A DNA stretch of 64,000 nucleotides from Lytechinus pictus. Taxonomy: Eukaryota. Under the pieces are notes generated by a model that saw nothing but the letters and a program-made list of their open reading frames with translations, searched no databases and had not been told where the DNA came from. The translations under genes were made by a program, and so were the position numbers. Location: contig NC_087245.1 in assembly GCF_037042905.1 (NCBI RefSeq), positions 13,516,001 to 13,580,000 of the forward strand. Reading direction: 5' to 3'. Of the stretch, positions 29,234 to 63,913 are shown piece by piece. Each line of letters begins with the position of its first letter. Positions within the stretch are counted from its first letter, which is position 1.

Positions 29234-29607
29234 ATGGTCTTAAACATTAACTTGAATTTTATTTACAGCTTAGAGATTAATTTTCCTTTGTTGAAAATAT
29301 CCAGGTATTCATTAAATCAAGGAAGATATTACAAACAATTCATTGTCACGAATTAATCTCTGCACTCTCCCTCGTTCACATGTTCAGAAACTTTCGATCA
29401 GCAATGAAAACCGAAACAAAGTTAATAAAAGTAGGAAGCTAATGAGTTACAAAAAAATGAGTTAGCACGTAGATAGGCCTTCTCGAAGTTTAGTCATTGG
29501 AAATTCGTTGACATGATAGGGAGGATTAATGCATCAAACGGCTCTTTCAGAGATTTCATTAAAAAATAGTGCTATGATATGAACGTTTTGATAAAACGTT
29601 TGTCAGG

Positions 29608-29683
29608 ATGATTAACAAGAACCTTCTTGCTGTTCAAGGTGTCATCTGTATGATCGGATGCTGTCTACTGTACACGTCGTCAG
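29608..29683 (+). CDS. Gene 2 exon 1: signal peptide (MINKNLLAVQGVICMIGCCLLYTSS)
   Basis: First ATG after an in-frame TGA, hydrophobic core, CAG|GTAAAG donor in phase 1. Confidence 0.68.
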
Positions 29684-35600: not shown

Positions 35601-38600
35601 TGTGTTCGAATCCCACCATGGTCTAGCGTCCTTTGGCAAGGAGTCAATCCACACTTTGCTACTCTCACCCAGGTGCTAATTGGGTACCAGTAGGAAAAAA
35701 CCGTCATTGTGGTTGGTTTAGCAAGTTTGCACCTAACAGGCTGCTTGAAATGCTATGAATCCAGTGACCGGGTAATAATAATTGTGAAGCGCTTTGAACA
35801 GTCGTAGATTGATAAAGCGCTATATACATGCAAATTATTATTATTATGTCCTGGTGTTTCAATTAGTTCTTTCGTTCTTTGTAAAAATCCATGGCTGTTT
35901 TGATTACCCGTGTGTTTCTGTTCTCCTTTACTGTTTTCCTCCAAATGCTAGAAATGAAAACAGAACTACACAAACGACAACACCGCCATGGTATCAATAT
36001 TCCATCTTGCACCTAGGTGGTGTCCTCCTTGCAGTTGCGATCATCGCTGTATTTTTCAATCAACTCTTGAGGTGTACTATGGATCAATGCTGTAAGACGC
36101 AGATCGCTACCATGCCAGACGCATCCATTCAAGAAAAGAGTCCCACCAGAAAGTCAGGATGGCGTCCATCATTAACGAGTCGCAGTTCGAAGTACGTTGT
36201 GAACCAGGTGGGAAGCGGCAGCAAAGACAAGTTGGACGGATCTGGAAAAAGTGATAGCGGTTTTGGACGTACGGACGATGATGCGGACTACATTACGATG
36301 AGGGTAAGTCCTGTGATTCTTTTTGTCAAGGGAATCGGTAAATAAGATTGTTAAATTTCTCAATACCGAGTGCCTTAGAAGCAAGGAAAAGTTTGACAAA
36401 AAACTTTTATGGTTTCTATAGGCTTCATGGTGTCTTTAGAGCTTTCTGGAGAGCGTTACATGAAATGACTTGTCTGACGTATTATCCCGTTTAACCGACA
36501 GATAACATAGCAACGTTGCTTCTCAGCCAATCAAAATCGAGAATAGCTGTCAAATCTGACAACTTGACCGACTGATGAAACATTTTCTTGTTGTGTTGTA
36601 ACTAGAACGGGCCTTTATTTTATTTCTTTAATAGAAAGTGAATACTATATCAAGGGTCCCTCCTCAAAGGAGTCCACAGTCCGATATCAATCAATCAAAG
36701 GGGTGGACCATACCCGGATTAAGCAGACATGGAGTAGACAGAGGATTAGTGAGGTTGAGGGATGGCTCTGAGGTTGCCAGCCCCTCTGATGGCGCTCATC
36801 AACACTCCCAGGATTTCATCCCACCACGAGTATACAAGAAGTATAAACCTTCACAGGTTAGGAAATCACAGCGATCTCTCTTGGATGGTGATACTTACAT
36901 CGTGGGGCAATCCTTTGATCCTGGCAGTCCAGGATCTTATGTAGATCCTACTCCAATTGTTTTCCAGCATCCATCAGCTTCACAGGTTAAACTAAGGGAC
37001 AAGCCCGTCAGCCGGAAGGCTTCATTAAACAGAAGAGCAAGTGTTTCCATGTTTAACCTCACCGATAATGACCTAGGCTTCGAGGTTGGCTTCCATCCAC
37101 CATGTCCACAGATGCCTCCTGAGTTTCAACAAGTAGTGGAGCCAGAGAGCTACAGTCCAAGGACGGATCCTCCGCCCGTTAACCACAGGGAACACTCCAG
37201 AAGTTCATCCACCGACTCTTTACCATTAGATTGCAATGATAGAGGTCGGTGCTACTCACCAATTGAACAGGTAAATATATTCACATGCAATATCTGGGAC
37301 CACAACAGAACGAACTCAGAATCAATCGATGGTATGATATTCCAACATAGCCATGATAGTGGCACTGATTGGTTGATGTGACTGTGACTGCAATATAAGG
37401 GGGAGACAGGGTAGGTGTTGCGTGCCATTCTGAAAAGCAGTTCGGTTTTTCCATATTGCTTAGCTTAATTATTATGATAATACCACTATGAATTAACCTC
37501 TAGAGATATTTTATTCAAGTGTCATGACCCCAGGGTTATGACCAGTGCTAAAGGTGTTAACCAGGACTTGATTATTAAGTACGTTTAGACGTGATAAGAC
37601 CCTACTTCTTAGACACACCAATGGATGTTATGTTGTTGACCGATTGATGTATGGATGTAAGGGCATCACAAGGTAAAACATGACTATATTGTATTTTCTC
37701 TATTAATTTGTATTTTCCTTTTCCCATTCAGAGTAATAAAGTATATCATTGGTGACATTACGTATACATGAATGTGTGATGAAGTGAGCCAATATTTTCG
37801 ATTGAAATATGTGTTGTGTGCCAAAGAAAGGTGAAACTACATAAACCGGTTGGTACTGGTTATGAGGTGACCTTGAGCAACACCAGCAATCTTACCATTT
37901 CCTTAAACAAGAAATATCTATCACATTTATGAACGAATAATACCCAATTTATTTATAGGGCGTCAATGATGTCAGTTTTGTGCTTTATATCAATGTAAAT
38001 GATTTCCTCGCTTTTTATTTCCTTGTTCGTAAGGAGGATCGCTATTCTACAGCGTTGGCCAAGTTTGATGTCTTGTGCAACAGTTTCGAAACAAACGCAA
38101 ATCGACAAAGCCCAAATGTGGTCGAATATGTCAATCTTCCACCCACGAACCGGAAGTGCTATGCTGCCACTAAGAGGCCTGTAATATCGAACCCAGGGTA
38201 CTTGAAACCTTCGAAGGTTGTTCGAGCTCTCTCTACTTCCGCTTACGACCTTGCAGTTTCATCCAGTTCTACTAACATAAGTGGTGAGTGGGTAATTCAT
38301 CTATTCGATTCAGTCCTTAAAACGTGCTTTATATTAATGTTTATTGAAAATCATAAGAGCAGATGAATTACAAATCCTGGAATAAAAAAAACTGCATACA
38401 GTATACTATAATGAAGCAATTAATATCTCAGTATAGTCGTGATATTCAGCCAATCATCACCGGAACGTCTTGTAAATGCAGCTATGCAATAATATTTTTT
38501 GATTGGTTATTAAAGTTTGTTTCATTTCATTTTATAAGCGCTGACGTTCTTATGAGATTTGGAGCTATCCATCCCACCACCAAGAAAAGGTTGCAATGTT

Positions 38601-39040
38601 CACTTGTATCTAAATGTATTATTTCATTACATATTGGAATACTTTCATTTCTTACTTGAGATTGGAGCAAAATTGGGTAAAAAAAGTTCCATTCAATGAA
38701 ATTGGTGGTTCTGTTGATTAATCTCTACTTTTCTTCGTTTTTTTTTGTAATAGATGCTTCGAAAACTCAAACTATGCGCAGTCCAATCTTTTCAAACAAC
38801 ACCCCAAGGGCGCCAACCAAATCCAACCTGTTGCACCCGCGTCTGAGAAACTCGATCGAGGTTAGGGTAAATGCACCTACAGACGATCAGGGCAGAAGCA
38901 GCAGTGACCGTGCTGGATCTGCATACAGGAGCTACTGTGAAATCGATGACATTGATCCAGGCACTGGGATGGAGTCTGCAGGAAGTCAAATTGATCATCA
39001 AGGATATAATCTCACACAGATTCGACTTCATAGTAAATAG
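29608..39040 (+). CDS. Gene 2 (9 coding exons, ~801 aa): type I membrane protein, signal peptide-2 divergent CUB domains-stalk-TM-long disordered Tyr-motif tail
   Basis: Exons 29608-29683, 30606-30719, 33280-33513, 34208-34543, 35302-35422, 35952-36303, 36635-37270, 38034-38283, 38754-39040. GT-AG, phases consistent, 2406 nt open. Confidence 0.8.
30606..30719 (+). CDS. Gene 2 exon 2: first half of CUB-like domain 1
   Basis: cacag acceptor. ITPINFPND...ITVKAPSNYR resembles CUB ITSPNYP...ITAPxGxR. G|GTAAT donor. Confidence 0.72.
32573..33155. mobile_element. Kolobok-like MITE (TTAA target duplication)
   Basis: TTAA|AGGGATGGT ... ACCATCCCT|TTAA with long inverted arms (AAATAGAGTAAAATTCACA / TGTGAATTTTACTCTATTT). 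Confidence 0.82.
33280..33513 (+). CDS. Gene 2 exon 3: second half of CUB-like domain 1
   Basis: VLLKF...LISPGEKLLITFSRGSLQIDNGSFILNA follows the CUB beta-strand pattern. Phase 1-1. Confidence 0.75.
34208..34543 (+). CDS. Gene 2 exon 4: CUB domain 2
   Basis: NLTSPSYPNNYP...IYAPIGCRL...SGNIASIWFSSG...KKGFVVSF. Phase 1-1. Confidence 0.85.
35302..35422 (+). CDS. Gene 2 exon 5: stalk with RERR furin-type site
   Basis: ttttcag acceptor. DDTPCIKHDRSLSPAPPNQRSNTASKQTRERRAAIYETTP. Phase 1 in, phase 2 out, matching exon 6. Confidence 0.72.
35540..35847 (+). mobile_element. Near full-length tRNA-derived SINE in intron 5 of gene 2
   Basis: A box TGGTGTAGCGG, B box GTTCGAATCC, central CACCCAGGTG..TGGGTACC core, L2-like 3' end AAGCGCT... 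and (TAT)n tail. Confidence 0.87.
35952..36303 (+). CDS. Gene 2 exon 6: Thr-rich stalk, TM helix, juxtamembrane tail
   Basis: TTQTTTPPW, then SILHLGGVLLAVAIIAVFFNQLL, then C..CCK; ends DYITMR|GTAAGT. Confidence 0.85.
36635..37270 (+). CDS. Gene 2 exon 7: Ser/Pro-rich cytoplasmic region
   Basis: Long GC-richer ORF (36638-37381), phase 0 acceptor, CAG|GTAAAT donor at 37270. Confidence 0.8.
38034..38283 (+). CDS. Gene 2 exon 8: cytoplasmic region with VEYVNL and GYLKP
   Basis: Phase 0 acceptor, G|GTGAGT donor, within ORF 37980-38366. Confidence 0.75.
38754..39040 (+). CDS. Gene 2 exon 9: terminal cytoplasmic exon (YCEI)
   Basis: Poly-T...TAG acceptor, phase 1, ends at TAG 39040. Confidence 0.75.
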
Positions 39041-40598
39041 GATTTATCAGGAATTGAAACAAAATTTATATTGAAATACCATTAATTTTATTTATTTGGA
39101 AGAATGGTACTATTTCCTAATAGGATAAACTTATTTATAGTAAGTAAAACTAAAAATACGATCTATAAATTAAGGTACCTGTATTTTCAACACCATTTCC
39201 TTTCGCTCTGTAGGCCCTGCTTGGTAGGTGATTCATCAGTTTTTCACAAAAAATAATTACCACCCCATACAGGATGCAGGCTTCAAAATTAACATTTGGA
39301 AAAAATTATTTCAATTCTTATATTTTTCTTGCGTATTTCATATATTAAAATTATTTCAAGACTACCTCTCTGAGTTATTTAACTGAAGAGTCTTACATTT
39401 GTCTAACCTTTTTAAGTCATTGCCGGTGATTTGTTTTATGTGAGAACATTAATAGTTTGAACGTCACGTAATCTCAACTGTTTATCTCAATTGTAATAGC
39501 AACAGCTAGGGAAAACATTGATCTTATTTATTATAGAATTTCTTATAGCTTTTTGTAGATACATTATGGGAAGTGTTTCATTTTTTTTACATATAAAAAA
39601 CAGCCAGAGGCGACTGCTATACTTATACTGAAATATGATTTCCCATGGGCATGGCATATTTGTCATAGACTTCTATGTAACATTTTGTTAGACCTATTGG
39701 TTACAAGGATTGTAAAGCCGGCCTGGGCAATTACTATAAATATTACATATAAAATACGGGAGTTATTAGCTTCTTGATAAACATAACATGGTGCTGAATA
39801 CGTGTACAGTTTCAAAGAATTCTCTTTCTAATTTTTAATTTATCAATTACGTTTTAACCGCATGTGTTACTACTTATCTTAATCTTGATGAACTCGCTGT
39901 GTTCGAAACAAAGCGAATATTAAACTTCTCTACGAAAATTGAATATGATAACTTGATAAGGTATTATTTTTCACGATTTAAAGGAGAATCTTGTTGTGTA
40001 AGCTGCACCTATATGTAGGTCAGTCTGATGTAGATACAGCTTCGAATGTATATTAATCAATGGATTGTGTTTTAAAAAAACGTTTTCTTGTATCATCACA
40101 CTCATCACACTAAGCATTCGAATGTCATCAATCACAAAACAGTAATGCCTCAGTAGCAGAGAAGAATATTTCTTTACTCTTGTGTAATTTCAAGATAATG
40201 GATGGCAATTTGGCAACTTGAAGAGATTTATATAATCCTTTTTATTTTTTTCGCTTTGTAACACATTCATGCAGATTATGTTTTGGACACCAAATTCAAC
40301 CTGAATTATCGGTGCATGCTGGGGAGATCGGAACAAAACATTGATTGAAACATACGGGACTTAATTCGTGTTCACGCAAATAAAAAAAGACTCTGACATG
40401 TGTATGTATATAAAGTTACACGTGTAGTATGTGTATAAACAATACAATTCAAACTGAAATTATCACAAAAAGATACAAAACAAGATGATATCTGCCATAC
40501 AGTATGTTCACATTGTGGACTATTTGCAGATGTGGTTCACACAAACAGCACTGAAAGTAATTTCACTCTGTGGATACCTCGACAGTGCGAGTGTTTAC

Positions 40599-45208: not shown

Positions 45209-45296
45209 ATGGGACGACGCCGACCTCATATCTTTTTATTAGGTGTTGTGATTTTCTCCGAACTGATTCCTCTTAGTTTTGCAGATGACTGTTATG
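45209..45296 (+). CDS. Gene 3 exon 1: signal peptide (MGRRRPHIFLLGVVIFSELIPLSFA|DDCYG)
   Basis: Basic N-terminus, hydrophobic core, S-F-A cleavage motif, G|GTAAAT donor in phase 1. Confidence 0.75.
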
Positions 45297-48200
45297 GTAA
45301 ATACAAGTTTATCTTTTATTCATTCTTTCTTGTACAATAAAGTAAATTTGTGTTGTTGATTGGATAAGTTATCAAGATGTTTACATGATTCACTATAGGC
45401 ACGTAAACATGTTTGATGTACCATTTATAATGTGGCAGAACTCGAAGCATTTTGTACACGGATTTTGAAATAGCTGATAATGATAACAACAATAATGATA
45501 ATAATGCTAACATTTATAGGGCGCTTTATACGGGTGTTTCAAGCACACAGGTGGTGTGACTAAGGTAAAAAATGAATCCATTAAAAAATGCTAGCCTTGA
45601 GAAAAGATGAGTTTTAAGTGAAGATTTGAAATCCTCGGAAATAATCGGAAAACTATTAGGCCCAATATTAAAGTATGTATTCAAATAGTTTCATACATAC
45701 ATACATACATGTATAAATGCATTATACTTTTTAAATATAAATGATAATAATTATAATGAAGGAACATTATTGGTCCTTACATTTTTATAGTTATGATCAC
45801 ATTTCAAAAGGTTTAACCTTTGTTGAGATTCTGATGTCGACGCCTCCGTAGGAATAGTGGCGCCTATGTCGGACTTCTAGTAAACAGACGAGACCAAAGA
45901 AAAATCATAAAAGTTAATGGTTTTTATTATTAAAAAGCCACTTCATATTCATTTCGATAAGACAATCGAAAATGAATCTATATCAGTATAACAAATGTAT
46001 ATTTGACATATCTACTTCGGAATGAGTACATAGGAAAACTATCTGATCAATTTCGAGGTATCAACGTCACAGGACTACCGATTCACTTTACCCTAAGAGT
46101 TCAGGCCATTAGGATAGAATGCTCACCGTAAAAAATGCCTATAGTTCTTACAATTATTACTTGTAGGATTATTCAAAACGTGAATAACGCATGTTTGTAG
46201 ACTGTAGAGTGACAGCGATCAGATACATCTAGGAAACTAGATGACAAACCCAAAGTTCACAAAAATCAATAATGGAAATGCTTCTTTTTGTTAATTAATT
46301 GGATCCGAAAAAATAAATGTAAACTTGATTCACGAATGCACTTGAACCTTACCATCTGATACGATAATATAGATATGTCTATTTGGAAATCTAGCCGTTG
46401 AATTTGTTACATTCTGAGAAACTTAATTAAACCCCAAAGTGGCTTAATCCGCATTGCCAAATTTGGAACTCTGATGGCGTGACGAGTGAGAAATAATGAG
46501 AAAAAGGCTGGTGATTGCCGTTGAAGAGTCCAAGTCCTTTCCCAAAAGACGTCGACGACGCCTGGGTGCCTCAAACGGGACCCATATAGATGTTTCTTTT
46601 TATGAACGCGGATAGGCCTATTGGCAGGCGGTGTGTAGAAAAAGTGACACAAGCGCGTCTCGAAAATTGGACTAGACTTTAATTCCGTCATTAATGGTTT
46701 GAATAAGCTTAATTGTGTAATAGTAGAGCGTATAAGCTCTAAAAATCACAACAATTGTGCAAATTTTGACTAAAGCATGAAACTTTCACAAGTATTAGTT
46801 TATGCTGTAAGGTTTATTTTATAGATGGGAGGTAAATTTATAAATGCCATTAACGGCCGAATATGGCATTTGTAAATTTACCTCCCGTCTTTGAAGTAAA
46901 TCTTACGGCATATACTAATATTTGTGAAAAGTTTCATGCTTTAGTCATAATTTGTAAAATTTTTCGGCTTATCCTCTCTAAAGACTTCAATGGAAAATAA
47001 TGTTTTAGGTCATTGGGAAAGCAAAAAACGACGATTTTATATATGTTACATACCGACACTACGCACGAGAAATGAAAAAAAATGTGATAACTCGTTATGA
47101 CAATAAAGTTTTTACATGTATCTCCTTCAGGCAGGTTAGAGGAAATCGATATCCCATTTGACACGAAAGGTAAAAGCTTTCAATTCACCTTAAACACGCC
47201 TATCTGTTACAACGCATTTGCCAAAGATGAAGATCACAGATTGAGACTGAACTTCTCCAGTTTTGAAATGAATGAGGGATATGACTATGTGGAGGTAGGC
47301 GATCTCCGGGAAGACAAGATAAGGTCGAAAGATAGCTTACTCGCTCGGTTCAGGTATGGTTGTATAATTTTTCTTCTTGAACATGTGGAAGATCAGCGTG
47401 GTTTAGAGTCCCTTCATTGAAATGAGTCAATTTACCAGTTATTCTCTAGAAACTAGACAGAGATACCCTTGTTTATTTCTATTACATGACACTCTGTTGT
47501 TTTCTTTCGCCATTCCCATATAAGTCCGTTCCATAAAGTTTCGAGTCCCTATAGTGGAGACATTTTAAATATCGTCAAGAATTATTTATTTGGTTCTTCC
47601 TATTTCAGTAGACAAAAAGTCCTCTACAGTGCGTCCCAAAAAAAACTATACACTTTTGAAATGGCTGCCAAATAAAAATATAACACTTTGGGGGAAATAA
47701 CTTATAGATATGGAAAGCCAATAAAGTCAACTTTTAAGTGAAACCAAAAAGTTGGAAAACTATTCATGCTTGAGCGAGCACTGCCCACTGAAACAAAGGG
47801 TATGAAAATTAGGGTGGGCCGGAATTAGCCTTCCAATTTCTTTCAAGTTTTTTGTTTGGTACTTGCAAAGTTGAGGGTTATTTGGTGAATTAAAGATCAG
47901 TTGTGATCAGTTTGTTGTTTGTGAAAATTTAATGCGTTATTAAATTGAATTTATTACATTGAAATTTAATGCATGAGTGATCGTGAATTGCAATTTTTAG
48001 TGCAGCATTTTGTCTTTATCATGTGGATCTCAACAATGTATTTATGAAAGTCAGGAGAAGAGGGGGTAATATGACTTAGGTAGGTGAAGTACGTTGATGG
48101 GATAAAGGTCAACATAACATTTAGCATCCCCTCCCTCCATCTCAACCCCCGGCCCCGCTTCTCTCCTCCTCAGACACTTCGACTAGGCTGAGCAGGAAGA

Positions 48201-51200
48201 CCTTACAGTTTTTTTGAGTGGTTAGTCCTTTGGAACTTGCTAAGCTAAATGAATGAGTGAGATAAGTTTTGGTTTCTTAGGCAAATTTCATGAGTTACTA
48301 AATTGAAATTTAATGCATGAGTGAACAGGAATTGAAATTTTAGTGTAGCATATTCATCTTGTGGGCCTCAGAAGTGTGTTCGTGAGAGTCAGAGTAATGT
48401 GATGGTACCTGTTACAAGCAAGAGGGCGAGATATGCTAAAACTTGGTTAAAAGGGCATTCCTCTTCTTTTTGTCCTTTTACAAATTAAAAGTCATAATTA
48501 TGTACCCTCCCCTCTCCACCTCCATTTCCCAGCCCCCCCTCTCTGTCTCACTTCCTGGAATGTAGCCTATTCAAAACTAAGCTGCCAAGTGACCGATGGC
48601 TGATGGTCATTTTTTTATTGAATTATAACCAAGAAATTTAATGATTATGATGATTAATGAAATAATTTATTGAAAAAAAACTGAATGTTTGATTGATCAC
48701 ATTGCACATTGAATGATTTGATTTAATGATAAATTGTTGATGAAATGATTGATAGCAAAAGTTGATGCCCCAATTCAGAATTAATCATTAAAGGGGAATC
48801 CAGCCTTGGCCATTAAATGTTGTGTTGGGAAGGAGAAAAATAAATTAAACAGAATGGTGAAAGTTTGAAAGAAATCGGACAAGCAATAAGAAAGTTATAG
48901 CTGCTTTAAAATTGAGATCACTAATACTATGTAGATTTCAAATTGGCAACTGGATAAGTAAATTATGACAAGGGGCAAGGACAACTTTCCCATAGGCCAT
49001 GTACTTTATTATCAGGGATTAGTGGTTTTCTCCTAAGTACCCATTCCCATGGGGCAGTAATCTAAATATAACCCAGGTAGTATATTGTTTTATGTCCTCA
49101 TGAAAGAGAAATATTAATTTGAAATAAAACTTTTGGGAAAAAATCACATTTTCGCCATAATATGAAATGGAGTACATGGAAGAGTAGTCCTTGCCTTACA
49201 TCACTATGACATCTCATATGCGGCCAATTTGAAGTCTCCATGGGTACAGTGATTACCAATATTTACAACTTTTAAAAATTCATAACTTTCTTGTTGTTTG
49301 TCCAATATTATTCAAACTTTCACCTATCAACTTGTCTGATTTTTCTTTTCCTTATAAAAACAATTTTTTATTTGGGTTGGATTCCCCTTTAAATCAACAT
49401 TCCGCTCTGGACTTCACGCGTACATGACAATAGCCATCAGTCTTTCAACAGGAGGGGAGGGCGGGAAAGAAGGAGGGGGCGGGGGCTGAATGTTCTGTTG
49501 ACCCTTATTCCATCAACCTACTTCTCCCACTTAAGTCCTATCTCATCCCCTATTCTCCCGACTTCCATGAACACACTGCTGAGATCCACATGATAAAGTT
49601 GAAATGCTGCCCAAAAAGAGATCCAAATGATAAAGTTGATATGCTGCCCCAAAAGTGTAATTTGTGTTCACTCATGCATTTAAGTTCAATTTAATAATTT
49701 ATAAACTTTGCATAAGCTACCAAAACTGGTAACGGTTGATCATTAATTTATCACAACGCCCTTAACTTTGCAAGTTCGAAAGGAATTGCCTCTTAAAAAC
49801 TGACATAAATTGGAAGGCTAATTCCAGCCCACCCTAATTTTCATACCCTTTGTTTCAGTGGACAGTGCTCGCTCAAGCATGAATAGTTTTCCAACTTTTT
49901 GGTGTCATTTGAAAGTTGACTTTATTGGCTTTCCATATATGTAAGTCTTTTCCCCCAAAATGCTATATTTTTTATTTGGCAGCCATTTCAAAAGTGTATA
50001 GTTTTTTTTTGGGACGCACTGTAGGAGTCTAGGTATTGTCGAATATCTAAAACCTTCGCCCTCCCACATGCACATCCGTATACCTCTGTGTAGAAAATTA
50101 ATATAGTCCTACAGCAATATCTTTTGATTTACCGATTCCCAGGCATCATTAAACAAAGATGAATTGGAACATACACCAAATATCTGCCCCATGGTAGGTG
50201 ATTTTCCCCTGTTTATTATCTATCAATCCGTCATATGCAAGGATTTGTTGTAGGGCCTATATAGTTTATACCATGGAGCTATGTTTTATAGCTCCATGTT
50301 TATACTGGCGAAAAACGTTTACTACTTGCTTCAGGAAATTCCCCCCCCCCCCTCTGACCCCTGGTTATGCTGGTTTGCTTTATTTCATATTCATTAAAAT
50401 CAACTTACTGCCGCGATGACTTAGGGTCTTTTCAAACGTAAATCATTGTTATGATGATTGCAATTCGTCTTTAGAATCACCGGACCTTTCATACGGAAAA
50501 TTAGTAACGTAATTTGAGTGAAACTGGAATTCACCTCCGGAGTGGAATTTGAATTCGTGATTGTGATTAGCGTTCGTGATTCTACTTTGGTTTTACACGT
50601 GCTAAAATTCGTCATGAGCCTAGCTTATTTTTAACTGGAATCATCATTCAAATTACGTGTTTTTTTTTTACCGTCTGAAAGGGCGGTTAGCCATTTTCTT
50701 AACAAACAACTTACTAGAACACATGTTGATGATGATGATTAACCACTAGGTTATGTTCCTTTGTTTTAACACTCCTTTTCATCGTTAAAGTGGGCGTGTT
50801 CTACCCAAAGATGTCGTTTCCTTGAGCAGCGGCATGTGGATTGAACTTCTGGTTAACGAAGAATTAGTTAAGTCTCATAGAAGAAAGGTGGAGTTCACTG
50901 TGACAGCTGAAGAACGACAAGGTAAGATGCAGCCATATCAAAGTGACGTCTATCCTTATCAAACCGATTTGAGTGAAGTGAAATGAAACAGATTAACGAA
51001 AATTACCTTAAGCATTTGGAAACTCACAAAATTGAAGCGTTTGGAGTTATGTTGTATGTATTTATTTAAAAAAAGAATCACAGAGTGTTCTCCAGACTAA
51101 TGCAAGAATGCGGGTCACTGACTGCTCACGAATGACTAGTTCGCATATAACAATTTTGATTATTAGAATAATTCGTTTTCTACAAGCATGACAAGTATAA

Positions 51201-54200
51201 GATTGGGGAAACTTCTCTTCTTTTTAAGTTATTATCCGTTTGGTTGAAAAGGTTAAAGAATTACATTGAGCGAAAAATCAAAACAACACATGCCTCTTTA
51301 TCCATGCTGAATCATTTCTGCAGTTGACATCAAGCTAGAATGCCCGACCCAATCACCTTCGAACATAACATACCCGGAGTTGGGGGGAAACTACAGCAAC
51401 AACGGCTACCGGCTCTGGTGGATACAAACAACCCCACCGTGCAACATCACAGTATATCCAATGGAATTTTGGTTAGGGCAACAATACGACTTAGTCTTTC
51501 TGACAGAAAACACAACAGGACCATTCCGAAGGCACACCTCCTTCAATCTTACTGGCAGGAGAGAACCACAGTATCTCCAAGGGAAGGCTTATACATCAGC
51601 AAGCAACAATCTGGTTGTCTTTTTCACATCGAATTTCGAAGTGCAGAGGCCCGGATTCACCTTCATACTCTTAGCAAATTCTACTGACGGAGAATATCCG
51701 ACATGTGAGTGGAGGCACGTTTTTACACTTGTTCACAAAACTCGATTAACATGCAAATGCAAAATAAATCAAAGGGTGATTTTGTAAACAATTTTCAATT
51801 TTTTTTACAATTATTACGATGACAACGTACAAATTTAATAAATTTGTATCTTTGAAAATGGCAATGAACACCTTTCAAACGTGCAACTTTCGGGTTATTG
51901 CGAAAGTTGATGCGTTGAACTCTTTTCCTCTAGGACGTTATGAGCCTATAAACTCACAACGTGATTTATTTTTCACACTGTTCTTTTTTATGACCTACAG
52001 AACAGGGTATTTTTTTAAGTAGTGCTTGTAAAAATATCTTTTTGCAGATGCTTCGACAGCGGAGTATCCAAGCAGGTCCCAGGTGTACCATGCTTCGTCA
52101 GTGACTACTACACATGTTGGTCAGGAAGATCAAGAACATAAAACAAAATTCTACCTTATAGTCGTTGGTGTGTCTGCAGTCGCTGTTGCCGTATCGGCTC
52201 TTCTCCTCGTTGCAGTGGTCAGATGCTACATTTCTGGCTCAAAGACTGGGACCTACAGCAGAGACAGTTGGAATAAATACTTTCCTACTGCCAGATCTGC
52301 ATCTACAGTGAGTTTTCCTTCTCGATTATGAACTAAAGGGATTGTTGTTAATCCAACCAGGTCTTGCCCCAATACGTTTTCTCGCTTTAAAATCGCAAAG
52401 AGCGCCCATTCCATGCATACCCTCAGAACAATTATTCTTGATAGGTATTGACTCTTTAAACTCCATTAATGAACTGACTTAACAAAGCTTCCTCATAGGC
52501 AGATCCAGGGGGACCCGAGGGACCCGCCCCCCCCCCTATTTGCGGAGCAAAAAAAAAGAAAAAAGGGAAAGAAAGAAAAAAAGAAGGGGAAAGAAAGGAG
52601 GAAAAAAGAAGACCAAAATAAGAGGAGGGAGACGAGTGAATAAAATAACGTCAGTGGAAGACTTGGAATATGATTTAAAATTATAAATTTCAAGTCCCTT
52701 CATTAAATTTTCGCTCGTGCTCGCATAGCCTGTTCAATGAGATACATACCTAGCTCAATAGGCTGATATGTAGCTTAAAATATCAAGTTTTGAAGTCAAT
52801 ATACAAAACACATTTCAGCTCGGACATCGAGCTTCCATTTTTTTGTTTGATTTACAAAGCTCTGTAAAATGTCCGTTTATGGTGTGAATATCATTTTGCA
52901 GCTTTTTGCGCTGTTCGCTCGCGTTATTTGATTTGCCAAGTATTATGATAGTTTATCCAAAATTACGTCTCGAGATTTGCGCTCGCATTAATCAAATAGT
53001 TCAAAAATATATCAACTCATAAATCCTATTCAAGATTACCAAAGTGCCTAAAATATCCAGTTTTCAGGCCTCAAATGTCAACAAATTTCACTCACTCATT
53101 AGGTTTATTATATTAATGAATATGATAATAAAATTTTCATGAATTCCTAATAACTAAATTGTCCCTTTTTCCAGAAAGGAATATCGACAAGTTTCATATC
53201 GCGCTTAGTAAGAGGAATAGGAAGATAGTCATCCTTTTTCATATGACAAAATGTCCTTAGGCCTAGAATGTACAGGTCCTAGGTCAAAATGATAATTAAG
53301 ATATCACCTCGCGCATTGTACTCGCATCATTTATTAAGTGCTATCCACATACACACAATTTCCCTACACAATGCTTTAGATAGTGATTAAATTCACCCTT
53401 TTCATACCGGAATATCAATCTTTTTCCGCTCGCGCTTCGCGCTCGCATTATTAATTTTCATGATAAAAAATAAATGTATTCAGAATGCCCAGATTCTGTT
53501 TAATTCTAAAAAACGCGCACATATGTTTATTGAAATACGCAGCTTGATCTTTTTTTTCAAAACGTGCTAAAATTATCAAATTTGCGCTCGCATTATTAAT
53601 GTAGGAACTTCATTTTTCATGATTTACAAAACATGAATAGAGTGTCCCATGTTTAGGTCTGAAATCTCTTTTTTCCGCTTGCGCTTCGCGCTCACATCAA
53701 TTGTTTAGTTTTATACCTATACCGTTTTAAAAAAGTGCTTAGAGTGTCATTTTTTTAGGTCGGAATTTCAAAAAAAATTCAGCTCGCGCTTCGCGCTCGT
53801 ATTATCTAAAAGTTGTAATAGGTATCGTCTTAATGGCTAACTGCAAATCGTCAATTTTTTGTTTGCTAATTACGCCACTGAGACAACCCCTTCAAGGAAA
53901 CAAACAAAAATCAACTTTGAGCGGCCGATCGGGGAAAATATGGGTGAGAAAAAATTTCGGCCCCCCCCCCTATTGACGGGAGCTGGATCCGCCCTGTTCC
54001 CTTATCTTGCCAAGCCATTGCAGCAAATACTGCTTTTACAATTTTGTAGTTATTAACTCTTGAATCTGTTCTTGTTCCATTGCAGGGAAGTTCTCTTGGT
54101 CGCTTCATCTCCTTTTCGCGTTACCCTGACGAAAGCTTCAGTGAGAGTTTCTCATCTGGAACACTCTCATCAAATACTCATTCCTCTGGTTCCTTCAGTG

Positions 54201-55468
54201 GTGGTTCATCCCTGTACAGCAGTAATACTTCATCTTCAAGTTCTTACCGATCCTCCATCTATGCTAGAATACGTACGCTATTTAGTACTCGTCGTGACGG
54301 AGACGACTTTTCCGTTTTTCGTGGATCTCCTTCGGGTAATCTTCTATCCACATTTCATCCACAAAGCTCGGAAAACACACACTCTGAATCATCAGATGAA
54401 GAACATCCCGTCCAGAGCGGAGATCCTAATTCGTACAGACGATTATCATTTAGAGCGATAAGGAACGCGTTCCAAAATCAGTTGCACAGAACTCCTATGA
54501 CTAACTTGCTATCAGTGAGATCAAGTTTTTCACGGAGCACGGATAGAACGAGTACGGAAGGTTCGTTGCAGGATATATATTCTTTAGTTGCCGATGGGGA
54601 GGCCGAAGAGAAAAATGATGATTTTGTTTTCACAACTGACACAACAGCAAGGATGAAAGTACAACATACTTACTTCAAAGGCTGCACAGTTGGATATGAT
54701 CCTATTTCGCAGCCGGTACAGAGTACTGCAAACTTGATACCCAGTGGTTCAGACGGCGCTCCAGCAATGGATCAACAAGAAATAATTTTAGGACAACATG
54801 ACGCAGGTGATAGAGCAGGGATCACCAGACCACGAAAAATATTGCACACCTATTTCCAAGGACAGAATAGGTTATGGTCAGGTAGTTGTCGAAAGAGTTC
54901 ACTTGGGAGGCCATTGCCATCAATTCCCGATCGACATAGAGGAGATGATGACAGGGAGACACTGATAAACAGTGTCACGTATGAATCACTTTCTGTCGAT
55001 TCCAAGTTTGCTCTTGATCGGGAAACTGGTACTGATTCTTCAAAATCACGTGCCGATGATGATTCTGTACACAGACACGTAGACCGAAGCGAGAGGGATG
55101 GCGGAAACCTATCAGGGTATGAAGCCAGTGGGAGTACTGAATATCATCATGATGAATCAAATACTAAAGACCACTTACTGCATCACACCTCCCCTCATCC
55201 ACTCAATGATTTAGCATGCGCATGTACGGTAGATGATAGTCCTGACGATACACCATTTCCACACAGTGACCGCATTGTTCTAACGAAATCGAATAAAGAG
55301 CATGAGAGGGGTAAGGTATTAAGGAATTCATCGACCTGCAATGCGAGATCTGATAGCAATGAGCTACATGATGAATCAACATCAACTTCAGAAATAAGTC
55401 AGCTCTATAGTAAAATGAACAAAAGAAAGATTGTACATACGTATTTCAGAGGACATGCTCAAACTTAG
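45209..55468 (+). CDS. Gene 3 (6 coding exons, ~821 aa): type I membrane protein, signal peptide-2 CUB domains-TM-long Ser-rich tail with ITIM-like and repeated HTYF motifs
   Basis: Exons 45209-45296, 47131-47353, 50791-50921, 51324-51704, 52048-52307, 54086-55468. GT-AG, phases consistent, 2466 nt open. An upstream in-frame ATG at 45116 is an alternative start. Confidence 0.83.
45478..45633 (-). mobile_element. 3' remnant of an L2-like LINE/SINE with (ATT)n tail
   Basis: (ATA)n run, then ATTTATAGGGCGCTTT...AAGATGAGTTTTAAG..GATTTGAA, typical of reverse-oriented L2 3' ends. Confidence 0.5.
46724..46980. mobile_element. Near-perfect ~255-bp hairpin MITE in intron 1 of gene 3
   Basis: GACTAAAGCATGAAACTTT...GGGAGGTAAATTTATAAATGCCAT / ATGGCATTTGTAAATTTACCTCCC...AAAGTTTCATGCTTTAGTC. 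Confidence 0.78.
47131..47353 (+). CDS. Gene 3 exon 2: CUB domain 1, first part
   Basis: HRLRLNFSSFEMNEGYDYVEVGD...LLARFS is a clear CUB signature. AG|GTATG donor, phase 2. Confidence 0.9.
47627..50021. mobile_element. Tc1/mariner-type non-autonomous element (2.4 kb including a nested insertion)
   Basis: TA|CAGTGCGTCCCAAAAAAAACTATACACTTTTGAAATGGCTGCCAAAT ... ATTTGGCAGCCATTTCAAAAGTGTATAGTTTTTTTTTGGGACGCACTG|TA; arms near-identical over ~210 bp. Confidence 0.9.
48792..49388. mobile_element. Kolobok-like MITE nested in the 47627-50021 element
   Basis: TTAA|AGGGGAATCCAGCC ... GGTTGGATTCCCCT|TTAA. Confidence 0.83.
50791..50921 (+). CDS. Gene 3 exon 3: CUB domain 1, second part
   Basis: (S)GRVLPKDVVSLSSGMWIEL...VEFTVTAEERQ continues ARFSG-xx-P-xx-V-x-S-xxx-MW. 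Phase 2 in, G|GTAAG out. Not in the ORF track. Confidence 0.85.
51324..51704 (+). CDS. Gene 3 exon 4: CUB domain 2
   Basis: ITYPELGGNYSNN...WWIQTTPPCNI...YDLV...TSASNNLVVFFTSNFEVQRPGF. Phase 1-1. Confidence 0.9.
52048..52307 (+). CDS. Gene 3 exon 5: stalk and TM helix
   Basis: FYLIVVGVSAVAVAVSALLLVAVVRC. tttgcag acceptor; ACA|GTGAGT donor, phase 0. Confidence 0.87.
52494..53996. mobile_element. Composite non-autonomous DNA transposon (hAT-like) in intron 5 of gene 3
   Basis: CATAGGCAGATCCAG ... CTGGATCCGCCCTG termini; repeated GCTCGCGCTTCGCGCTCGC motifs; an internal TACGCCACTG end at 53871-53880 suggests nesting. Confidence 0.68.
54086..55468 (+). CDS. Gene 3 exon 6: 460-aa cytoplasmic tail to stop
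   Basis: ttgcag acceptor, phase 0, in the longest ORF of the window (54080-55468). Confidence 0.87.
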   Translation, partial: GSSLGRFISFSRYPDESFSESFSSGTLSSNTHSSGSFSGGSSLYSSNTSSSSSYRSSIYARIRTLFSTRRDGDDFSVFRGSPSGNLLSTFHPQSSENTHSESSDEEHPVQSGDPNSYRRLSFRAIRNAFQNQLHRTPMTNLLSVRSSFSRSTDRTSTEGSLQDIYSLVADGEAEEKNDDFVFTTDTTARMKVQHTYFKGCTVGYDPISQPVQSTANLIPSGSDGAPAMDQQEIILGQHDAGDRAGITRPRKILHTYFQGQNRLWSGSCRKSSLGRPLPSIPDRHRGDDDRETLINSVTYESLSVDSKFALDRETGTDSSKSRADDDSVHRHVDRSERDGGNLSGYEASGSTEYHHDESNTKDHLLHHTSPHPLNDLACACTVDDSPDDTPFPHSDRIVLTKSNKEHERGKVLRNSSTCNARSDSNELHDESTSTSEISQLYSKMNKRKIVHTYFRGHAQT

Positions 55469-55588
55469 AGTGACTTTGAAGCATTAATATACACATAATG
55501 GTGCTTGCGAAAACATGTTGGAAGGGAAAGAGGACCTGCCCATGAAGGATGTATGTTGGGGAGGAAATTATTATGTGCCCCTGGCATG

Positions 55589-60850: not shown

Positions 60851-61611
60851 CTATTAAAGACTATTAAAGAGGGTCGGTTCTCATAAGAGAGACCATTCCT
60901 CTAATCATGCTAATTAAAAGGAACTTTCGGTATCATGACTTATTGTGTACAGGGGGTGGTCGACTAGGATGAAAAAGGGAGGGGCAGGCCACTGCGGCTC
61001 CCTTTGCTTTCTCAAGTAGTGAAAAAAGGGAAAAATGTGAAGAAATGAGGGAGAGTATATAAAAATGAAATATCTGGTCAGTTTAACTCAGTAATATCCT
61101 TAGGCCTATAATTTAATTGAGAAGAATACGCGACGCATTCATCACCCCCTCCACCGTCAAATACCCTGGCACCGCCCCTGTTTGCTGGTTGTATACCGAC
61201 AAGCCCACAACCCACCAAATTTTGTAAACAATTCACTTTAATGGGATTGCTTCGAGTGTCAATAAAACAAATTTATTTTTTTGGTGGACTCTAGTTTTTC
61301 AATTTTATCACTCATGTATGACACGTATGACGCAACTGGACCATCTAAATAGTTCTGTGTTCCTTGGATACTCCATTGCTTTATTCGAAATCATCCAGCT
61401 TATATGGCTCTGTAACTTGGTACAATAGAAAGCATGCCCTGATGAACGAGTAAATGTAATTAATGGAACGGCGAGTCCTATATCTACTTTAGCCCCACCT
61501 GATACCCTGTCACTTTCTGATAGACATCTCCTTAACGGCATTTTGAAAATTTCTGGCAGTGTTAGCTCGACTCTCATCCTTTTATATCAGCTGAAAACGA
61601 TAAGGTACAGG

Positions 61612-63913
61612 ATGGAGAAATTGATCGTGGTTTGTGGAGCGACTGGGACTGTCGGAAAATCCGTTGTTTACGCCCTTCTTGAATCTAGTTCCTTGACAGT
61701 TCGAGGAATCACCAGTAATGTCAAGGGCTACACGGCCACATCACTTGCTGAATTAGGTAGGCCTGAATCACATTCATGTTATCTTTCTACCAGAAAACCT
61801 AGTTCATTGAATGAGTGCTTTCTATCAAATTCTTCTATCGTACGATGAACATAAGTTACAATTTCTTATTGACATTTTTTATTTAAACCGTTAAAGAACC
61901 CTGAAATTACAACTATTTGCTTCTTTGATCCAGTGGGATCATACTAAAACCTTTCTCATTACCATTAATAATCACTATACAAGGTAATTACGAAAGCCTC
62001 ATGGATTAAATTTTAAAATCTTAATTTTCGTAACATCAGACAGGTCCCATAATACGGCATTGTTTGAAATTCGAACAATTTGAAATACGAACTTTATCAA
62101 TATTTTCAAAACACGATATGAAAATAAACTGATTCAATGTTATTATCATGCGTTCTCATAACACCCTTATGTGCTAATTATACTTTCATTATAAATTGTG
62201 TTTGTTGTTGATGTTTTGTTGATATTTTTTTAAATTGCTTAGTGTCTCTTTGTACATGTATTCGTTAAAAATGAATGCTAAATTGTTGCAGTTAGAATGC
62301 CATCAATTATATATCTCAAACTTAGGAAATACTCCCAAACCATAGATGATTATTTCAATGAAATATAAATCGGATCAATCTCTTTTTTTTTCTTACAACC
62401 TTGCTCTAAAGGTTCTTTCATATCTACAAAACATATGCGTAATGCTATATGATCACTGGGGTAAAGCGTAATCCAGACCTATAGAAGCTATTACGTTTTT
62501 TCCAATGAGATAACATCGGTCGGTTTGTTGTCAGTCTCGAACTACATATAGTTCGTCTAAAAAAACACTATACACTTTTGAAATGGCTGCCAAATATAAA
62601 ATGAATCACTTTTTTGGGAAAGACATAATATACCGGTATATATACAAATGGAAAGCAGGGGCAGCGGAACGGTTTTGAAAGTGGGGGGGGGGGGGGGCTG
62701 ACCATAACAACAATCACAATCAGATGGTCATTTTTACGTTTTTGTACACGGTTTGGAAAAAAGTGGGCGTTGGCTTAACCCTCCCGTTTCTGCTGCCCCT
62801 GGAAAGCCAATAAAGTCAAAATTCAAATGACATTAAAAAAGTTGTAAAACTTTTCATACTTGAGTGAGCACTGCTTTGCAAATTTCCAATTAAAGGATTC
62901 GCCTCTCAAAAACTGAAAGAAATCGGAAGGCTAATTCCTGCCTGCCCAGTCAAATGTTCATACCCTTTATTCAAGTGGACAGTGCTCACTCATGTGTGAA
63001 AAGTTTCAAACTTGTTGGTGTCACTTAAAATTTGACTTTATCGGCTATCCATATAAGAACCCCCCCCCCAAAAAAAAAAAAGTGATATCATTTCAATCAG
63101 GCAGCCCTTTCCAAAATGTGTAGTTTTTGGGGGGTTATACGCAAGGTAGTTTTCATAGTATAATTTTCTCTTTAAGTATAGTATTATCGCCCTTCCGTTC
63201 AACAACAAATCAATGCACAACATATCAGTGGAAAGATTAAATCCATTAAGAATCCATCTGATCCCATTTCTGACGTGCTCTGATGCACACTTTATTCAGG
63301 TCTATAGATTTCACTCTCCTAAAAAGTCGTTTAAAGTGATTTTGAACAAACAAAAATAGGAGGGTTGGCGTTCTAAGCTTTGCTGATTATTGGAAGCTAT
63401 TAAGCTCGAAAGAGAGAGAGAGAGAGAAAGAGAGAGGGAAGAAATGGGTGGGGCTTGACATACTGGAGCCGACTAATATAGAGGGAAATTAAGAGTGGAC
63501 ATACATACAAGCAAGGTTGTATACAAATTCTTTAATCCGTTACCATAATGGAAAAGAGAGAGAAAAATAAAGCATTAAAGTAGATGGTTAAAGCAGACTT
63601 TTTACGTTTACCGTTTATAAAGTAAAGAAAAGTAAATATTCATCCCATTTGCCTCAATATAATGTCTATATTTGTTTCGTTTTGCTAACAGACAAATGGA
63701 TTTTTTTTTTTTTTTGCTCTTATTATTTCATTTTTTTATATAATTGACAGGAAACTAACCCGTTCAACCACTTTGTATTTTTTAGGAGTTGAAATGATGC
63801 AAGCTTCGGCGGAGGATAAACCCTCACTGGAAAACGCATTTGGTGGTGCTTATGGTGTCTTCATAGTTACAGATTACTATAAAATCAAAGACCAAGCTAA
63901 AGAAATTCAAATG
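61612..63913 (+). CDS. NMRAL1: NmrA-like family domain-containing protein (NMRAL1/HSCARG-like), first two coding exons; gene continues beyond the window
   Basis: Exon 61612-61756 MEKLIVVCGATGTVGKSVVYALLE...VRGIT (Rossmann GxxGxxG). Exon 63786-63913 GVEMMQASAEDKPSLENAFGGAYGVFIVTDYY...KEIQM matches the NMRAL1 pattern GAYATFIVTNYW...EVKQG. Phase 1 junction. Ortholog vs paralog not resolved. Confidence 0.85.
62549..63146. mobile_element. Diverged, internally deleted copy of the 47627-50021 Tc1-type element, in the NMRAL1 intron
   Basis: Shares CTATACACTTTTGAAATGGCTGCCAAAT, GGAAAGCCAATAAAGTCAA and GGAAGGCTAATTCC with it. Confidence 0.75.
62656..62801. mobile_element. Small CAGGGGCAGC...GCTGCCCCTG MITE nested in the 62549 element, 5-bp TSD GAAAG
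   Basis: GAAAG|CAGGGGCAGCGGAAC ... GTTTCTGCTGCCCCTG|GAAAG; the empty site ATGGAAAGCCAAT is seen at ~47710. Confidence 0.78.
63409..63438. repeat. (GA)n microsatellite
   Basis: Direct inspection. Confidence 0.85.

What the first reader, a model, noticed from the sequence alone, without database searches (positions are those of the whole stretch)
54653..55453. Unrecognised motif K-[VI]-x-H-T-Y-F-x-G repeated three times in the gene 3 tail
Seen: MKVQHTYFKG (54653-54682), RKILHTYFQG (54833-54862) and RKIVHTYFRG (55424-55453, almost at the C-terminus) sit in otherwise non-repetitive disordered sequence. Codons differ synonymously (CAT ACT TAC / CAC ACC TAT / CAT ACG TAT), so the repeat is kept at protein level, not by recent DNA duplication. 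It matches no ITAM/ITIM/NPxY consensus I know. Inference: a multivalent docking site, possibly phosphotyrosine-dependent, for an unknown adaptor.
Basis: partly seen in the sequence, partly recalled or inferred. Interest (0 to 1): 0.7.

Follow-up and report, generated by a model that had tools for sequence, protein, structure and literature searches.

The report
Conserved repeated tail motif, urchin CUB receptor
A short peptide motif (K-[VI]-x-H-T-Y-F-x-G) really does occur three times in the unstructured intracellular tail of an unstudied sea-urchin membrane protein. Selection has kept it in other urchins and in a neighbouring sister gene, next to a classic SH3-binding proline motif, so it is probably a docking site, though its partner is unknown.

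Summary
Three copies of K-[VI]-x-H-T-Y-F-x-G lie in frame in the 460-codon last exon (54086-55468, +) of a Lytechinus pictus gene. The gene encodes signal peptide, two CUB domains, one membrane helix and a disordered tail. Chance is excluded: P(≥3 HTYF) is about 2e-9, and 3 of only 6 strict pattern hits in the 812-Mb genome lie in this exon.

All three copies are kept in four other urchin orthologs whose tails are only 43-49% identical. A fourth strict hit led to a tandem paralog 142 kb away, which carries two copies. Across 24 instances H, F and the final G never change, and Y is kept in 23.

The middle copy sits a fixed 15-16 residues upstream of an invariant R-x-L-P-x-I-P-x-R block, which fits both SH3-ligand consensus classes. 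In the S. purpuratus paralog this whole module is duplicated.

The family has two genes in this genome. It was found only in sea urchins, all members are annotated "uncharacterized", and no paper mentions the motif.

Best reading: a family-specific multivalent docking motif in a signalling-receptor tail. Phosphotyrosine dependence is untested.

The scan has noted a similar kind of CUB receptor pair on another piece of this genome. I did not compare the two families directly.

The parts
54653..54682 (+). Motif copy 1, MKVQHTYFKG (tail residues 190-199)
   Evidence: Identical (M/I-KVQHTYFKG) in all five group-A orthologs. It is among the four most conserved 9-residue windows of the tail. It is tandemly duplicated in S. 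purpuratus.
54833..54862 (+). Motif copy 2, RKILHTYFQG (tail residues 250-259); N-terminal half of the bipartite module
   Evidence: H254, Y256, F257 and G259 are invariant across both paralog groups in alignment A1.
54908..54934 (+). RPLPSIPDR (tail residues 275-283): fits class I (+xΦPxΦP) and class II (ΦPxΦPx+) SH3-ligand consensus, 15 residues after copy 2
   Evidence: L277, P278, I280, P281 and R283 are invariant in A1. Spacing to the motif is 15-16 residues in every family member, and the module is duplicated in S. purpuratus paralog P0021. It has the highest pLDDT in the C-terminal half of the tail. The consensus assignment rests on established SH3 literature (own knowledge). RPLPSPP is the p130Cas Src-SH3 site (PMC2956669).
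54974..54991 (+). V-T-Y-E-S-L, ITIM-like (V-x-Y-x-x-L/V); its tyrosine is conserved in all five orthologs
   Evidence: Y299 column reads YYYYY. The V-x-Y-x-x-[LV] pattern is read in 4 of 5 orthologs and is absent from paralog group B.
55424..55453 (+). Motif copy 3, RKIVHTYFRG (tail residues 447-456), four residues before the stop
   Evidence: Orthologs read RKILHTYFRG (L. variegatus), RKIAHIYFRG (S. purpuratus), RKIVHIYFGG and RKIMHIYFRG.
54086..55468 (+). Last coding exon: 460-residue disordered tail (inferred cytoplasmic) plus stop codon
   Evidence: Open frame of 460 codons after acceptor ...ttgcag|GGA. It aligns end to end with L. variegatus XP_041453504.1 (89% identity) and with S. purpuratus XP_011667706. 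AF2 mean pLDDT is 36. dN/dS against L. variegatus is 0.6.
52048..52308 (+). Stalk and transmembrane exon (membrane helix FYLIVVGVSAVAVAVSALLLVAVV at 52149-52220); donor gtgagt at 52309, phase 0 into 54086
   Evidence: The junction ...ARSAST|GSSLGRF is as in the S. purpuratus RefSeq model.
51323..51703 (+). Second CUB domain exon
   Evidence: tblastn of P0001, P0010 and P0021. The Pfam CUB hit on this exon is sub-threshold. The paralog ectodomain folds as two CUB domains.
50783..50920 (+). Exon for the C-terminal part of the first CUB domain
   Evidence: tblastn.
47205..47351 (+). Exon for the core of the first CUB domain (5' boundary not fixed; lies roughly 47100-47205)
   Evidence: tblastn. 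Sub-threshold Pfam CUB hit.
45209..45296 (+). Putative first coding exon: MGRRRPHIFLLGVVIFSELIPLSFADDCYG (signal peptide), donor gtaaat
   Evidence: Read from the sequence. Inferred by analogy with the paralog N-terminus. No transcript evidence supports it.

Best explanation
The three copies are instances of a family-specific short linear motif. Its consensus is [KR]-[KR/M]-[VIM]-x-H-x-Y-F-[KQR]-G. It lies in the intrinsically disordered tail of an uncharacterised sea-urchin type-I membrane protein (signal peptide, CUB, CUB, membrane helix, 460-residue tail), the L. pictus ortholog of L. variegatus LOC121406560 and S. purpuratus LOC105439880. The tail is inferred to be cytoplasmic.

Selection keeps the motif while the rest of the tail drifts. 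I read the copies as multivalent peptide docking sites that recruit a cytosolic partner to the receptor.

The middle copy is one half of a fixed-spacing bipartite module: motif, 15-16 residues, then R-x-L-P-x-I-P-x-R. The second half fits the SH3-ligand consensus in both orientations.

The most likely concrete mechanism (about one chance in three) runs as follows. An SH3-bearing tyrosine kinase or adaptor of the Src-family type docks on the proline block. It phosphorylates or engages the neighbouring H-x-Y-F tyrosine. The outer copies add further binding sites, as in the p130Cas, CDCP1 and DCBLD scaffolds.

Shown: the motif, its conservation, copy-number changes, disorder, fixed spacing, and restriction to two genes. 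Inferred: topology, any binding, phosphorylation, and partner identity.
For: - Presence and non-randomness.
- All copies are conserved in four further urchin orthologs with 43-49% tail identity.
- The motif windows and GRPLPSIPD are conservation islands in a C-terminal half that is only 39% identical.
- The tail as a whole is under weak constraint (dN/dS 0.6 against L. variegatus).
- A tandem paralog (L005/L010 = LOC129260680; P0010, P0011, P0021, P0005) carries two copies.
- Across 24 instances H, F and the final G are invariant, and Y is kept in 23 and never becomes F.
- The spacing to RxLPxIPxR is fixed, and the module is duplicated in S. purpuratus.
- Similarity between copies is confined to 12-16 residues, with no DNA repeat.
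- The tail is disordered, with a small pLDDT rise at the proline block and at copy 3.
- The ectodomain is a tandem CUB pair, so the tail should face the cytoplasm.
- RPLPSPP is the Src-SH3 site of p130Cas (PMC2956669).
Against: - There is no direct evidence of binding or phosphorylation.
- The residues upstream of Y are basic, which is unusual for tyrosine-kinase substrates. G at +3 fits no SH2 specificity class I know (own knowledge).
- One paralog copy in L. variegatus reads H-S-H-F, so Y is lost there.
- The strict motif occurs in no other long open frame among the hits examined in this genome, so no shared cellular "code" is evident.
- The family is shallow: only camarodont-type urchins were found.
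- Transcription of this exon in L. pictus was not verified.
- The complex prediction of the module with an L. pictus Src-family-like SH3 gave no verdict.
Confidence: 0.55

Rival explanations
1. The motif is a phosphorylation-independent ligand that binds by beta-strand addition to a PTB or FERM-F3-type domain. Read as Φ-x-H-x-x-F, [VI]-x-H-T-Y-F lines up position by position with the Φ-x-N-x-x-[FY] / Φ-x-N-P-x-Y ligands of Dab, Numb, talin and kindlin-type domains. H takes the place of N, and the terminal G provides the turn.
For: - H, F and G are the strictly invariant positions, while Y is lost once.
- A hydrophobic residue always sits five positions before F.
- The motif lies in a disordered receptor tail.
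- The positional analogy itself is from my own knowledge of PTB ligands and was not tested.
Against: - The defining N (and P) of PTB ligands is absent in all 24 instances.
- No precedent known to me has H in that place.
- Y never changes to F across the instances, which suggests the hydroxyl matters.
- No structural test was possible.
Confidence: 0.2
2. The copies act within the receptor itself rather than as docking sites. They could be basic-aromatic patches that lie on the inner membrane leaflet, or strands that pair with each other or between tails to cluster the receptor. They would be left over from old internal segment duplications.
For: - Each copy combines 2-3 basic residues with V/I, Y and F.
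- Copies 1 and 2 are about 60 residues apart, the same period as the recent duplication in S. purpuratus.
- The strict motif is unique to this family.
Against: - AlphaFold2 pairs no strands and shows no structure at the copies.
- The charge and hydrophobicity are modest compared with known membrane-binding patches (own knowledge).
- The invariant H and G and the fixed spacing to the proline block are better explained by specific recognition.
Confidence: 0.12
3. The motif is a basophilic Ser/Thr-kinase or other modification site centred on the T before Y, with the basic residues at -4 and -5 serving kinase recognition.
For: Basic residues sit upstream in every copy. R-x-S sites follow copy 2 (NRLSS, RRVSF).
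Against: The T is replaced by I, N or S in 8 of 24 instances, including I in copy 3 of three orthologs. H, Y, F and G stay fixed. The basic spacing fits no common kinase consensus I know.
Confidence: 0.05
4. It is an artefact: a chance recurrence, or an exon that is not coding or not expressed.
Against: - P is about 2e-9 for chance.
- The 460-codon frame is open in an AT-rich genome and is kept open in five species.
- RefSeq models in L. variegatus and S. purpuratus splice into it in this frame.
- The motif is conserved in a paralog.
Confidence: 0.03

Closest known systems
CDCP1 (Trask) and DCBLD1/DCBLD2 (ESDN): vertebrate CUB-domain single-pass scaffold receptors
   Same: Type-I membrane proteins with CUB domains outside and a disordered tail carrying several copies of a tyrosine motif that recruits SH2 or other partners after Src-family or Abl phosphorylation (own knowledge). 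Same general design: CUB ectodomain plus a multivalent tail.
   Different: No sequence relationship was found: the tail profile hits only urchin proteins. There are no LCCL or discoidin domains. The motif is H-x-Y-F-x-G in a basic context, not the Y-x-x-P of DCBLD or the CDCP1 tyrosine sites. Phosphorylation here is unproven.
p130Cas (BCAR1) Src-binding domain: RPLPSPP plus YDYV
   Same: A bipartite module in a disordered scaffold: a class-I SH3 ligand beginning R-P-L-P-S and a nearby tyrosine, which together dock Src SH3 and SH2 (PMC2956669). Here R-P-L-P-S-I-P lies 15 residues from H-T-Y-F.
   Different: The order is reversed (tyrosine first here). The tyrosine context differs completely. 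There is no homology. Binding is untested, and the complex prediction gave no verdict.
Neuropilin a1a2, PCPE-1 CUB1-CUB2 and NETO2 (tandem CUB ectodomains)
   Same: These are the best structural matches to the family's ectodomain model (Foldseek E 3e-12 to 2e-8). NETO and neuropilin are also single-pass co-receptors.
   Different: Only 12-19% identity. No LDLa, discoidin or MAM domains. Their tails are short or unrelated and lack the motif.
PTB / FERM-F3 ligands (Φ-x-N-P-x-Y, Φ-x-N-x-x-[FY]; integrin beta3 ...N-I-T-Y-R-G-T)
   Same: A short strand-plus-turn motif in receptor tails, with a hydrophobic residue five positions before an aromatic, and often in more than one copy per tail (own knowledge).
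   Different: The defining asparagine is replaced by an invariant histidine in all 24 instances. The pattern is formally not met.

Membership tests
CUB-domain proteins (Pfam PF00431) | Significant match to the CUB profile, or a CUB beta-sandwich fold | tested here: met
   Paralog P0010 scores 37.5 bits, P0021 36.1 and ortholog P0001 27.4 (cut-off 21.4). The AF2 model of the ectodomain shows two beta-sandwiches that match neuropilin a1a2 and PCPE-1. The window's own single exons reach only 14 bits each but align to those proteins.
DCBLD1/2 (ESDN) | CUB + LCCL + discoidin (FA58C) ectodomain; Y-x-x-P repeats in the tail | tested here: not met
   Pfam finds only CUB. The tail has no Y-x-x-P series. 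The tail profile finds no vertebrate protein.
CDCP1 | Sequence homology to CDCP1 ectodomain or tail | tested here: not met
   The word-based and full HMM searches return only urchin proteins. CDCP1 is not among the top Foldseek matches.
NETO1/2 | CUB-CUB-LDLa ectodomain | tested here: not met
   No LDLa domain. NETO2 is a structural match for the CUB pair only.
SH3 ligand, class I (+xΦPxΦP) and class II (ΦPxΦPx+) | Sequence fits the consensus | tested here: met
   R-P-L-P-S-I-P-D-R was read directly. L, P, I, P and the trailing R are invariant, and the leading residue is R or K in all members.
SH3 ligand, class I and class II | Actual binding to an SH3 domain | tested here: inconclusive
   Complex prediction with an L. 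pictus Src-family-like SH3 (L049:1483-1680) scored 0.25, under the mark of 0.34. The tool's verdict was no answer.
ITAM / ITIM / NPxY / YxxΦ (for the H-T-Y-F copies) | Y-x-x-[LI] pairs; [SIVL]-x-Y-x-x-[ILV]; N-P-x-Y; Y-x-x-hydrophobic | tested here: not met
   All copies read H-x-Y-F-x-G, with G at +3, H at -2, and no N-P. A separate V-T-Y-E-S-L at 54974-54991 does fit the ITIM pattern.
PTB ligand Φ-x-N-x-x-[FY] | Asparagine three residues before the aromatic | tested here: not met
   The position is H in 24 of 24 instances.
ANKRA2/RFXANK ligand P-x-L-P-x-[IL] | Proline two residues before L-P-x-I | tested here: not met
   That position is R or K (R-P-L-P-S-I, R-S-L-P-P-I) in all members. The motif definition comes from the review PMC13058979.

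The most novel reading that the evidence does not exclude
H-x-Y-F-x-G, with basic residues upstream, is an uncatalogued ligand class for a conserved signalling domain (an SH2, PTB or FERM-type pocket). It works together with an SH3 ligand at fixed spacing, so this two-gene urchin family would define a new bipartite docking code for an SH3-plus-second-domain adaptor or kinase.
Probability: 0.15. Interest if true: 0.6.

Novelty: new variant of a known kind. Interest (0 to 1): 0.4.

Why it matters
Sea urchins carry many lineage-specific single-pass receptors whose signalling is unknown. Here the tail gives an unusually clean handle. It has a 10-residue motif with three invariant residues, two to four copies per protein, and a textbook SH3 ligand at fixed distance. 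It occurs in only two genes, in a species (L. pictus) that can be bred and edited. That makes partner identification by peptide pull-down straightforward and the result easy to interpret. The reach is limited, because the family was found only in sea urchins and the strict motif is not used elsewhere in this genome. The finding therefore bears mainly on echinoderm receptor biology and on the catalogue of linear motifs.

Tried and rejected
- Complex prediction of the motif-2/PxxP module with an L. pictus Src-family-like SH3 exon gave no verdict (0.25 against a mark of 0.34). This is evidence neither way.
- Literature. HTYF and six longer motif strings gave nothing relevant. The five LOC gene identifiers appear in no paper.
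- PDB sequence search with the module and with the C-terminal 25 residues gave no hit at E<=10.
- ESM Atlas feature search of tail residues 170-300 gave no usable hit.
- Other strict-pattern hits were rejected as chance. L006 (KILHTYFRG, 41 nt 83% like copy 3, in a 24-codon frame) and L007 lie in short frames. The 24 other hits of the broad pattern that I fetched all lie in frames of 84 codons or fewer. 49 further hits were not examined, but the total of 79 is close to the control of 64.
- The neighbouring CUB-CUB-TM gene in the window (about 29.6-39 kb) has no detectable similarity to this family and no motif.
- From reading alone I considered and dropped PP1 RVxF, 14-3-3, WIRS, LIR, the IQ motif, the MAPK D-motif and the ANKRA2 PxLPxI motif, because their defining positions are not met.
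Full report
**Observation**

Translating 54086-55480 (+) gives one open frame of 460 codons that ends at TAG 55466-55468. A six-frame regex finds HTYF nowhere else in the window. The H-T-Y codons differ synonymously between copies. Neither repeat finder nor Tandem Repeats Finder sees any DNA repeat over them.

With the tail's own amino-acid frequencies, the expected number of HTYF is 0.002 and P(three or more) is 1.7e-9. A cruder shuffle test (two partners at 6 or more of 9 identities) was reached by 3 of 300 shuffles, because the tail is serine-rich. The composition-weighted figure and the genome count are the better measures.

In the whole 812-Mb assembly the degenerate DNA pattern for [KR]-[VIM]-x-H-T-Y-F-x-G occurs 6 times against 2 for the reversed control. 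Three of the six are in this exon.

**The gene**

- The genome is Lytechinus pictus. The paralog described below is XP_063953550.1 (LOC129260680) on a 44.3-Mb record, the length of the window's contig.
- tblastn of the L. variegatus ortholog XP_041453504.1 (P0001, LOC121406560) lays out five exons: about 47205-47351, 50783-50920, 51323-51703, 52048-52308 and 54086-55468.
- The fourth exon carries a membrane helix (52149-52220) and ends with a gtgagt donor in phase 0. The last exon follows a ttgcag acceptor. The joined reading ...ARSAST|GSSLGRF... is the one in the S. purpuratus RefSeq protein.
- A likely first exon with a signal peptide is at 45209-45296. This is inferred only.
- Pfam finds CUB above threshold in the ortholog and paralogs, but only weakly in the window's single exons.
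- An AlphaFold2 model of the paralog ectodomain (pTM 0.64) shows a signal helix, two beta-sandwiches, a disordered stalk and a membrane helix. Its best Foldseek matches are neuropilin a1a2, PCPE-1 CUB1-CUB2, MASP and NETO2.
- The protein is therefore signal peptide, CUB, CUB, membrane helix and a 460-residue tail. The tail should be cytoplasmic. This is inferred from the CUB domains being extracellular and from R/K directly after the helix.
- AlphaFold2 on the tail with its seven-sequence alignment gives mean pLDDT 36 and only two short helices, so it is disordered.

**Conservation**

The word-based search found four relatives of the tail: L. variegatus (89% identical), S. purpuratus LOC105439880 (43%), and two unnamed assemblies (49% and 45%).

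| Copy | Conservation in orthologs |
|---|---|
| Copy 1 | Letter-perfect in all four |
| Copy 2 | RK[VI]xHTYF[KQ]G |
| Copy 3 | RKIxH[TI]YFxG |

Against the three distant orthologs, the C-terminal half of the tail is 39% identical. Within it, copy 1 and GRPLPSIPD score 1.0 over nine residues, and the windows over copies 2 and 3 score 0.81-0.85.

Between the two Lytechinus species the exon has dS 0.065 and dN 0.039, giving dN/dS 0.6. The tail as a whole is only weakly constrained, which makes the fixed motif stand out.

Profile-profile comparison of the ~60-residue segments around the copies aligns only the 12-16 motif columns. The motif is therefore the selected unit, not a remnant of a larger repeat.

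**A paralog and the true consensus**

A fourth strict pattern hit lies 142 kb downstream on the minus strand. It is the last exon of a tandem paralog, LOC129260680. The ortholog pair is also adjacent in L. variegatus by locus number (LOC121406560/61). The paralog has the same architecture. Its tail is about 30% identical to the window's and holds RRMTHTYFKG and KKVTHNYFKG. The S. purpuratus paralog (LOC105447507, P0021) holds ERKVSHIYFKG and EKKVTHTYFKG.

Across 24 instances in nine proteins:

- H, F and the last G are invariant.
- Y is present in 23. The exception is L. variegatus paralog copy 1, H-S-H-F. Y is never replaced by F.
- The residue between H and Y is T, I, N or S.
- One or two basic residues and a V, I or M precede H.

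An older L. pictus model (P0006) reads ...YFKC at one copy, where the present genome has G.

**A bipartite module**

In every member, 15-16 residues after one motif copy comes R/K-x-L-P-x-I-P-x-R. Here it reads RPLPSIPDR at 54908-54934. L, P, I, P and the trailing R are invariant across both paralog groups. In the S. purpuratus paralog the whole module (motif, spacer, proline block) is present twice. S. purpuratus group A has a recent 59-residue duplication that adds a fourth motif copy, which is absent from a close relative. Copy number thus ranges from 2 to 4.

By the established consensus (own knowledge), the proline block is a class I SH3 ligand (+xΦPxΦP) and, read the other way, a class II ligand (ΦPxΦPx+). 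The Src-SH3 site of p130Cas is RPLPSPP (PMC2956669).

The same tail also has an ITIM-like V-T-Y-E-S-L whose tyrosine is conserved in all five orthologs.

**Distribution**

- A full HMMER profile search of 1.84 billion representative proteins returned six proteins, all of them these urchin genes.
- An ectodomain search returned only the paralog group.
- A protein search of the L. pictus genome with the S. purpuratus paralog tail finds exactly two loci.
- A looser motif pattern gives 79 genome hits against 64 for the control. Only the five in these two genes lie in long open frames among the 29 I could examine.
- All named members are annotated "uncharacterized protein".
- No paper in the library mentions the loci or the motif strings.

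**Mechanism**

The evidence shows a selected, multicopy linear motif in a disordered receptor tail, coupled at fixed distance to an SH3-ligand consensus. I read it as a multivalent docking element (confidence 0.55).

The most likely concrete version is that an SH3-bearing kinase or adaptor of the Src-family type binds the proline block and phosphorylates or engages the neighbouring tyrosine.

- For this version: Y is strictly kept and never becomes F, there is a p130Cas-like pairing, and the tail has other conserved tyrosines.
- Against it: the upstream context is basic, G at +3 fits no SH2 class I know, one copy has Y changed to H, and no phospho data exist.

The main rival is a phosphorylation-independent strand-plus-turn ligand of PTB or FERM-F3 type. 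Φ-x-H-x-x-F parallels Φ-x-N-x-x-[FY], but the defining N is never present. A cis or membrane-binding role and a Ser/Thr-kinase site are less likely. Artefact is all but excluded.

**Not achieved**

- Transcript evidence. I worked beside those places and sent none of their letters to search tools.
- The complex prediction with an L. pictus Src-family-like SH3 exon (L049, found through and read) gave no verdict.

**Earlier notes of the scan**

- One note (s1-329197) describes another tandem pair of CUB receptors with tyrosine-motif tails on a different piece of this genome. My two-locus result suggests that pair is a different family, but I did not compare them directly.
- A note on this window (s1-294533) pairs this gene with the upstream CUB-CUB-TM gene. 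I found no detectable similarity between them.

**Verdict**

The motif is a new variant of a known kind of feature, in a narrow lineage-specific family. Interest is moderate (0.4).

Noticed in passing
G000:C1:13712653-13713687 (-), = L005:1224-2234 / L010:2615-3649: Tandem paralog LOC129260680, 142 kb downstream of the window's gene on the opposite strand. It has the same CUB-CUB-TM-tail plan, two motif copies and the RPLPSIP block.
   Followed up: yes
window 54974-54991: ITIM-like V-T-Y-E-S-L in the same tail, 14 residues after the proline block. Its tyrosine is conserved in all five orthologs, and the pattern is kept in four.
   Followed up: partly
window 54437-54484 (tail residues about 118-133): Conserved R-R-L-S-F-R-A-I-R-N-A-F block: a basophilic-kinase-type R-R-x-S-Φ site at the start of the only confidently helical stretch of the tail. 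R, I, R, N and F are invariant in both paralog groups.
   Followed up: no
window 29600-39100 (+): Upstream neighbour gene with a membrane helix (ORF 35794-36345) and a different long tail (36638-37381). The scan noted it as a CUB-CUB-TM receptor. It has no BLAST-detectable similarity to this family and no H-x-Y-F motif.
   Followed up: partly
window 17967-20062 (-): Three adjacent open frames of a non-LTR retrotransposon reverse transcriptase (LINE-like), next to a masked/N stretch at 20340-20508.
   Followed up: no
window 61543-61848 (+): Start of an NmrA-like / NAD-binding gene (MEKLIVVCGATGTVGKS...). The same neighbour follows the ortholog in L. variegatus (L012, Pfam NmrA), so local gene order is conserved.
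   Followed up: partly
L006 (G000:C1:18085814-18085839, +): An isolated 41-nt stretch 83% identical to the DNA of motif copy 3, encoding KILHTYFRGH in a 24-codon frame. It could be chance or a tiny stray fragment of the exon's 3' end.
   Followed up: partly
G000:C1:13599427 and 13608427 (+), L017/L018: Two identical 26-nt pattern hits (KMLHAYFPG) exactly 9,000 bp apart, between the two paralogs. They lie in short frames, so a local tandem duplication of non-coding DNA is likely.
   Followed up: partly
L049:1258-1680 (G000:C17, +): A single exon encoding the N-terminus (MGNCL...), unique region and complete SH3 domain of a Src-family-like kinase of L. pictus.
   Followed up: partly
P0006 vs P0010 (L. 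pictus paralog models): The older RefSeq model reads RRMTHTYFKC where the current genome and model read ...YFKG. This is a polymorphism or an assembly error at an otherwise invariant motif residue.
   Followed up: no
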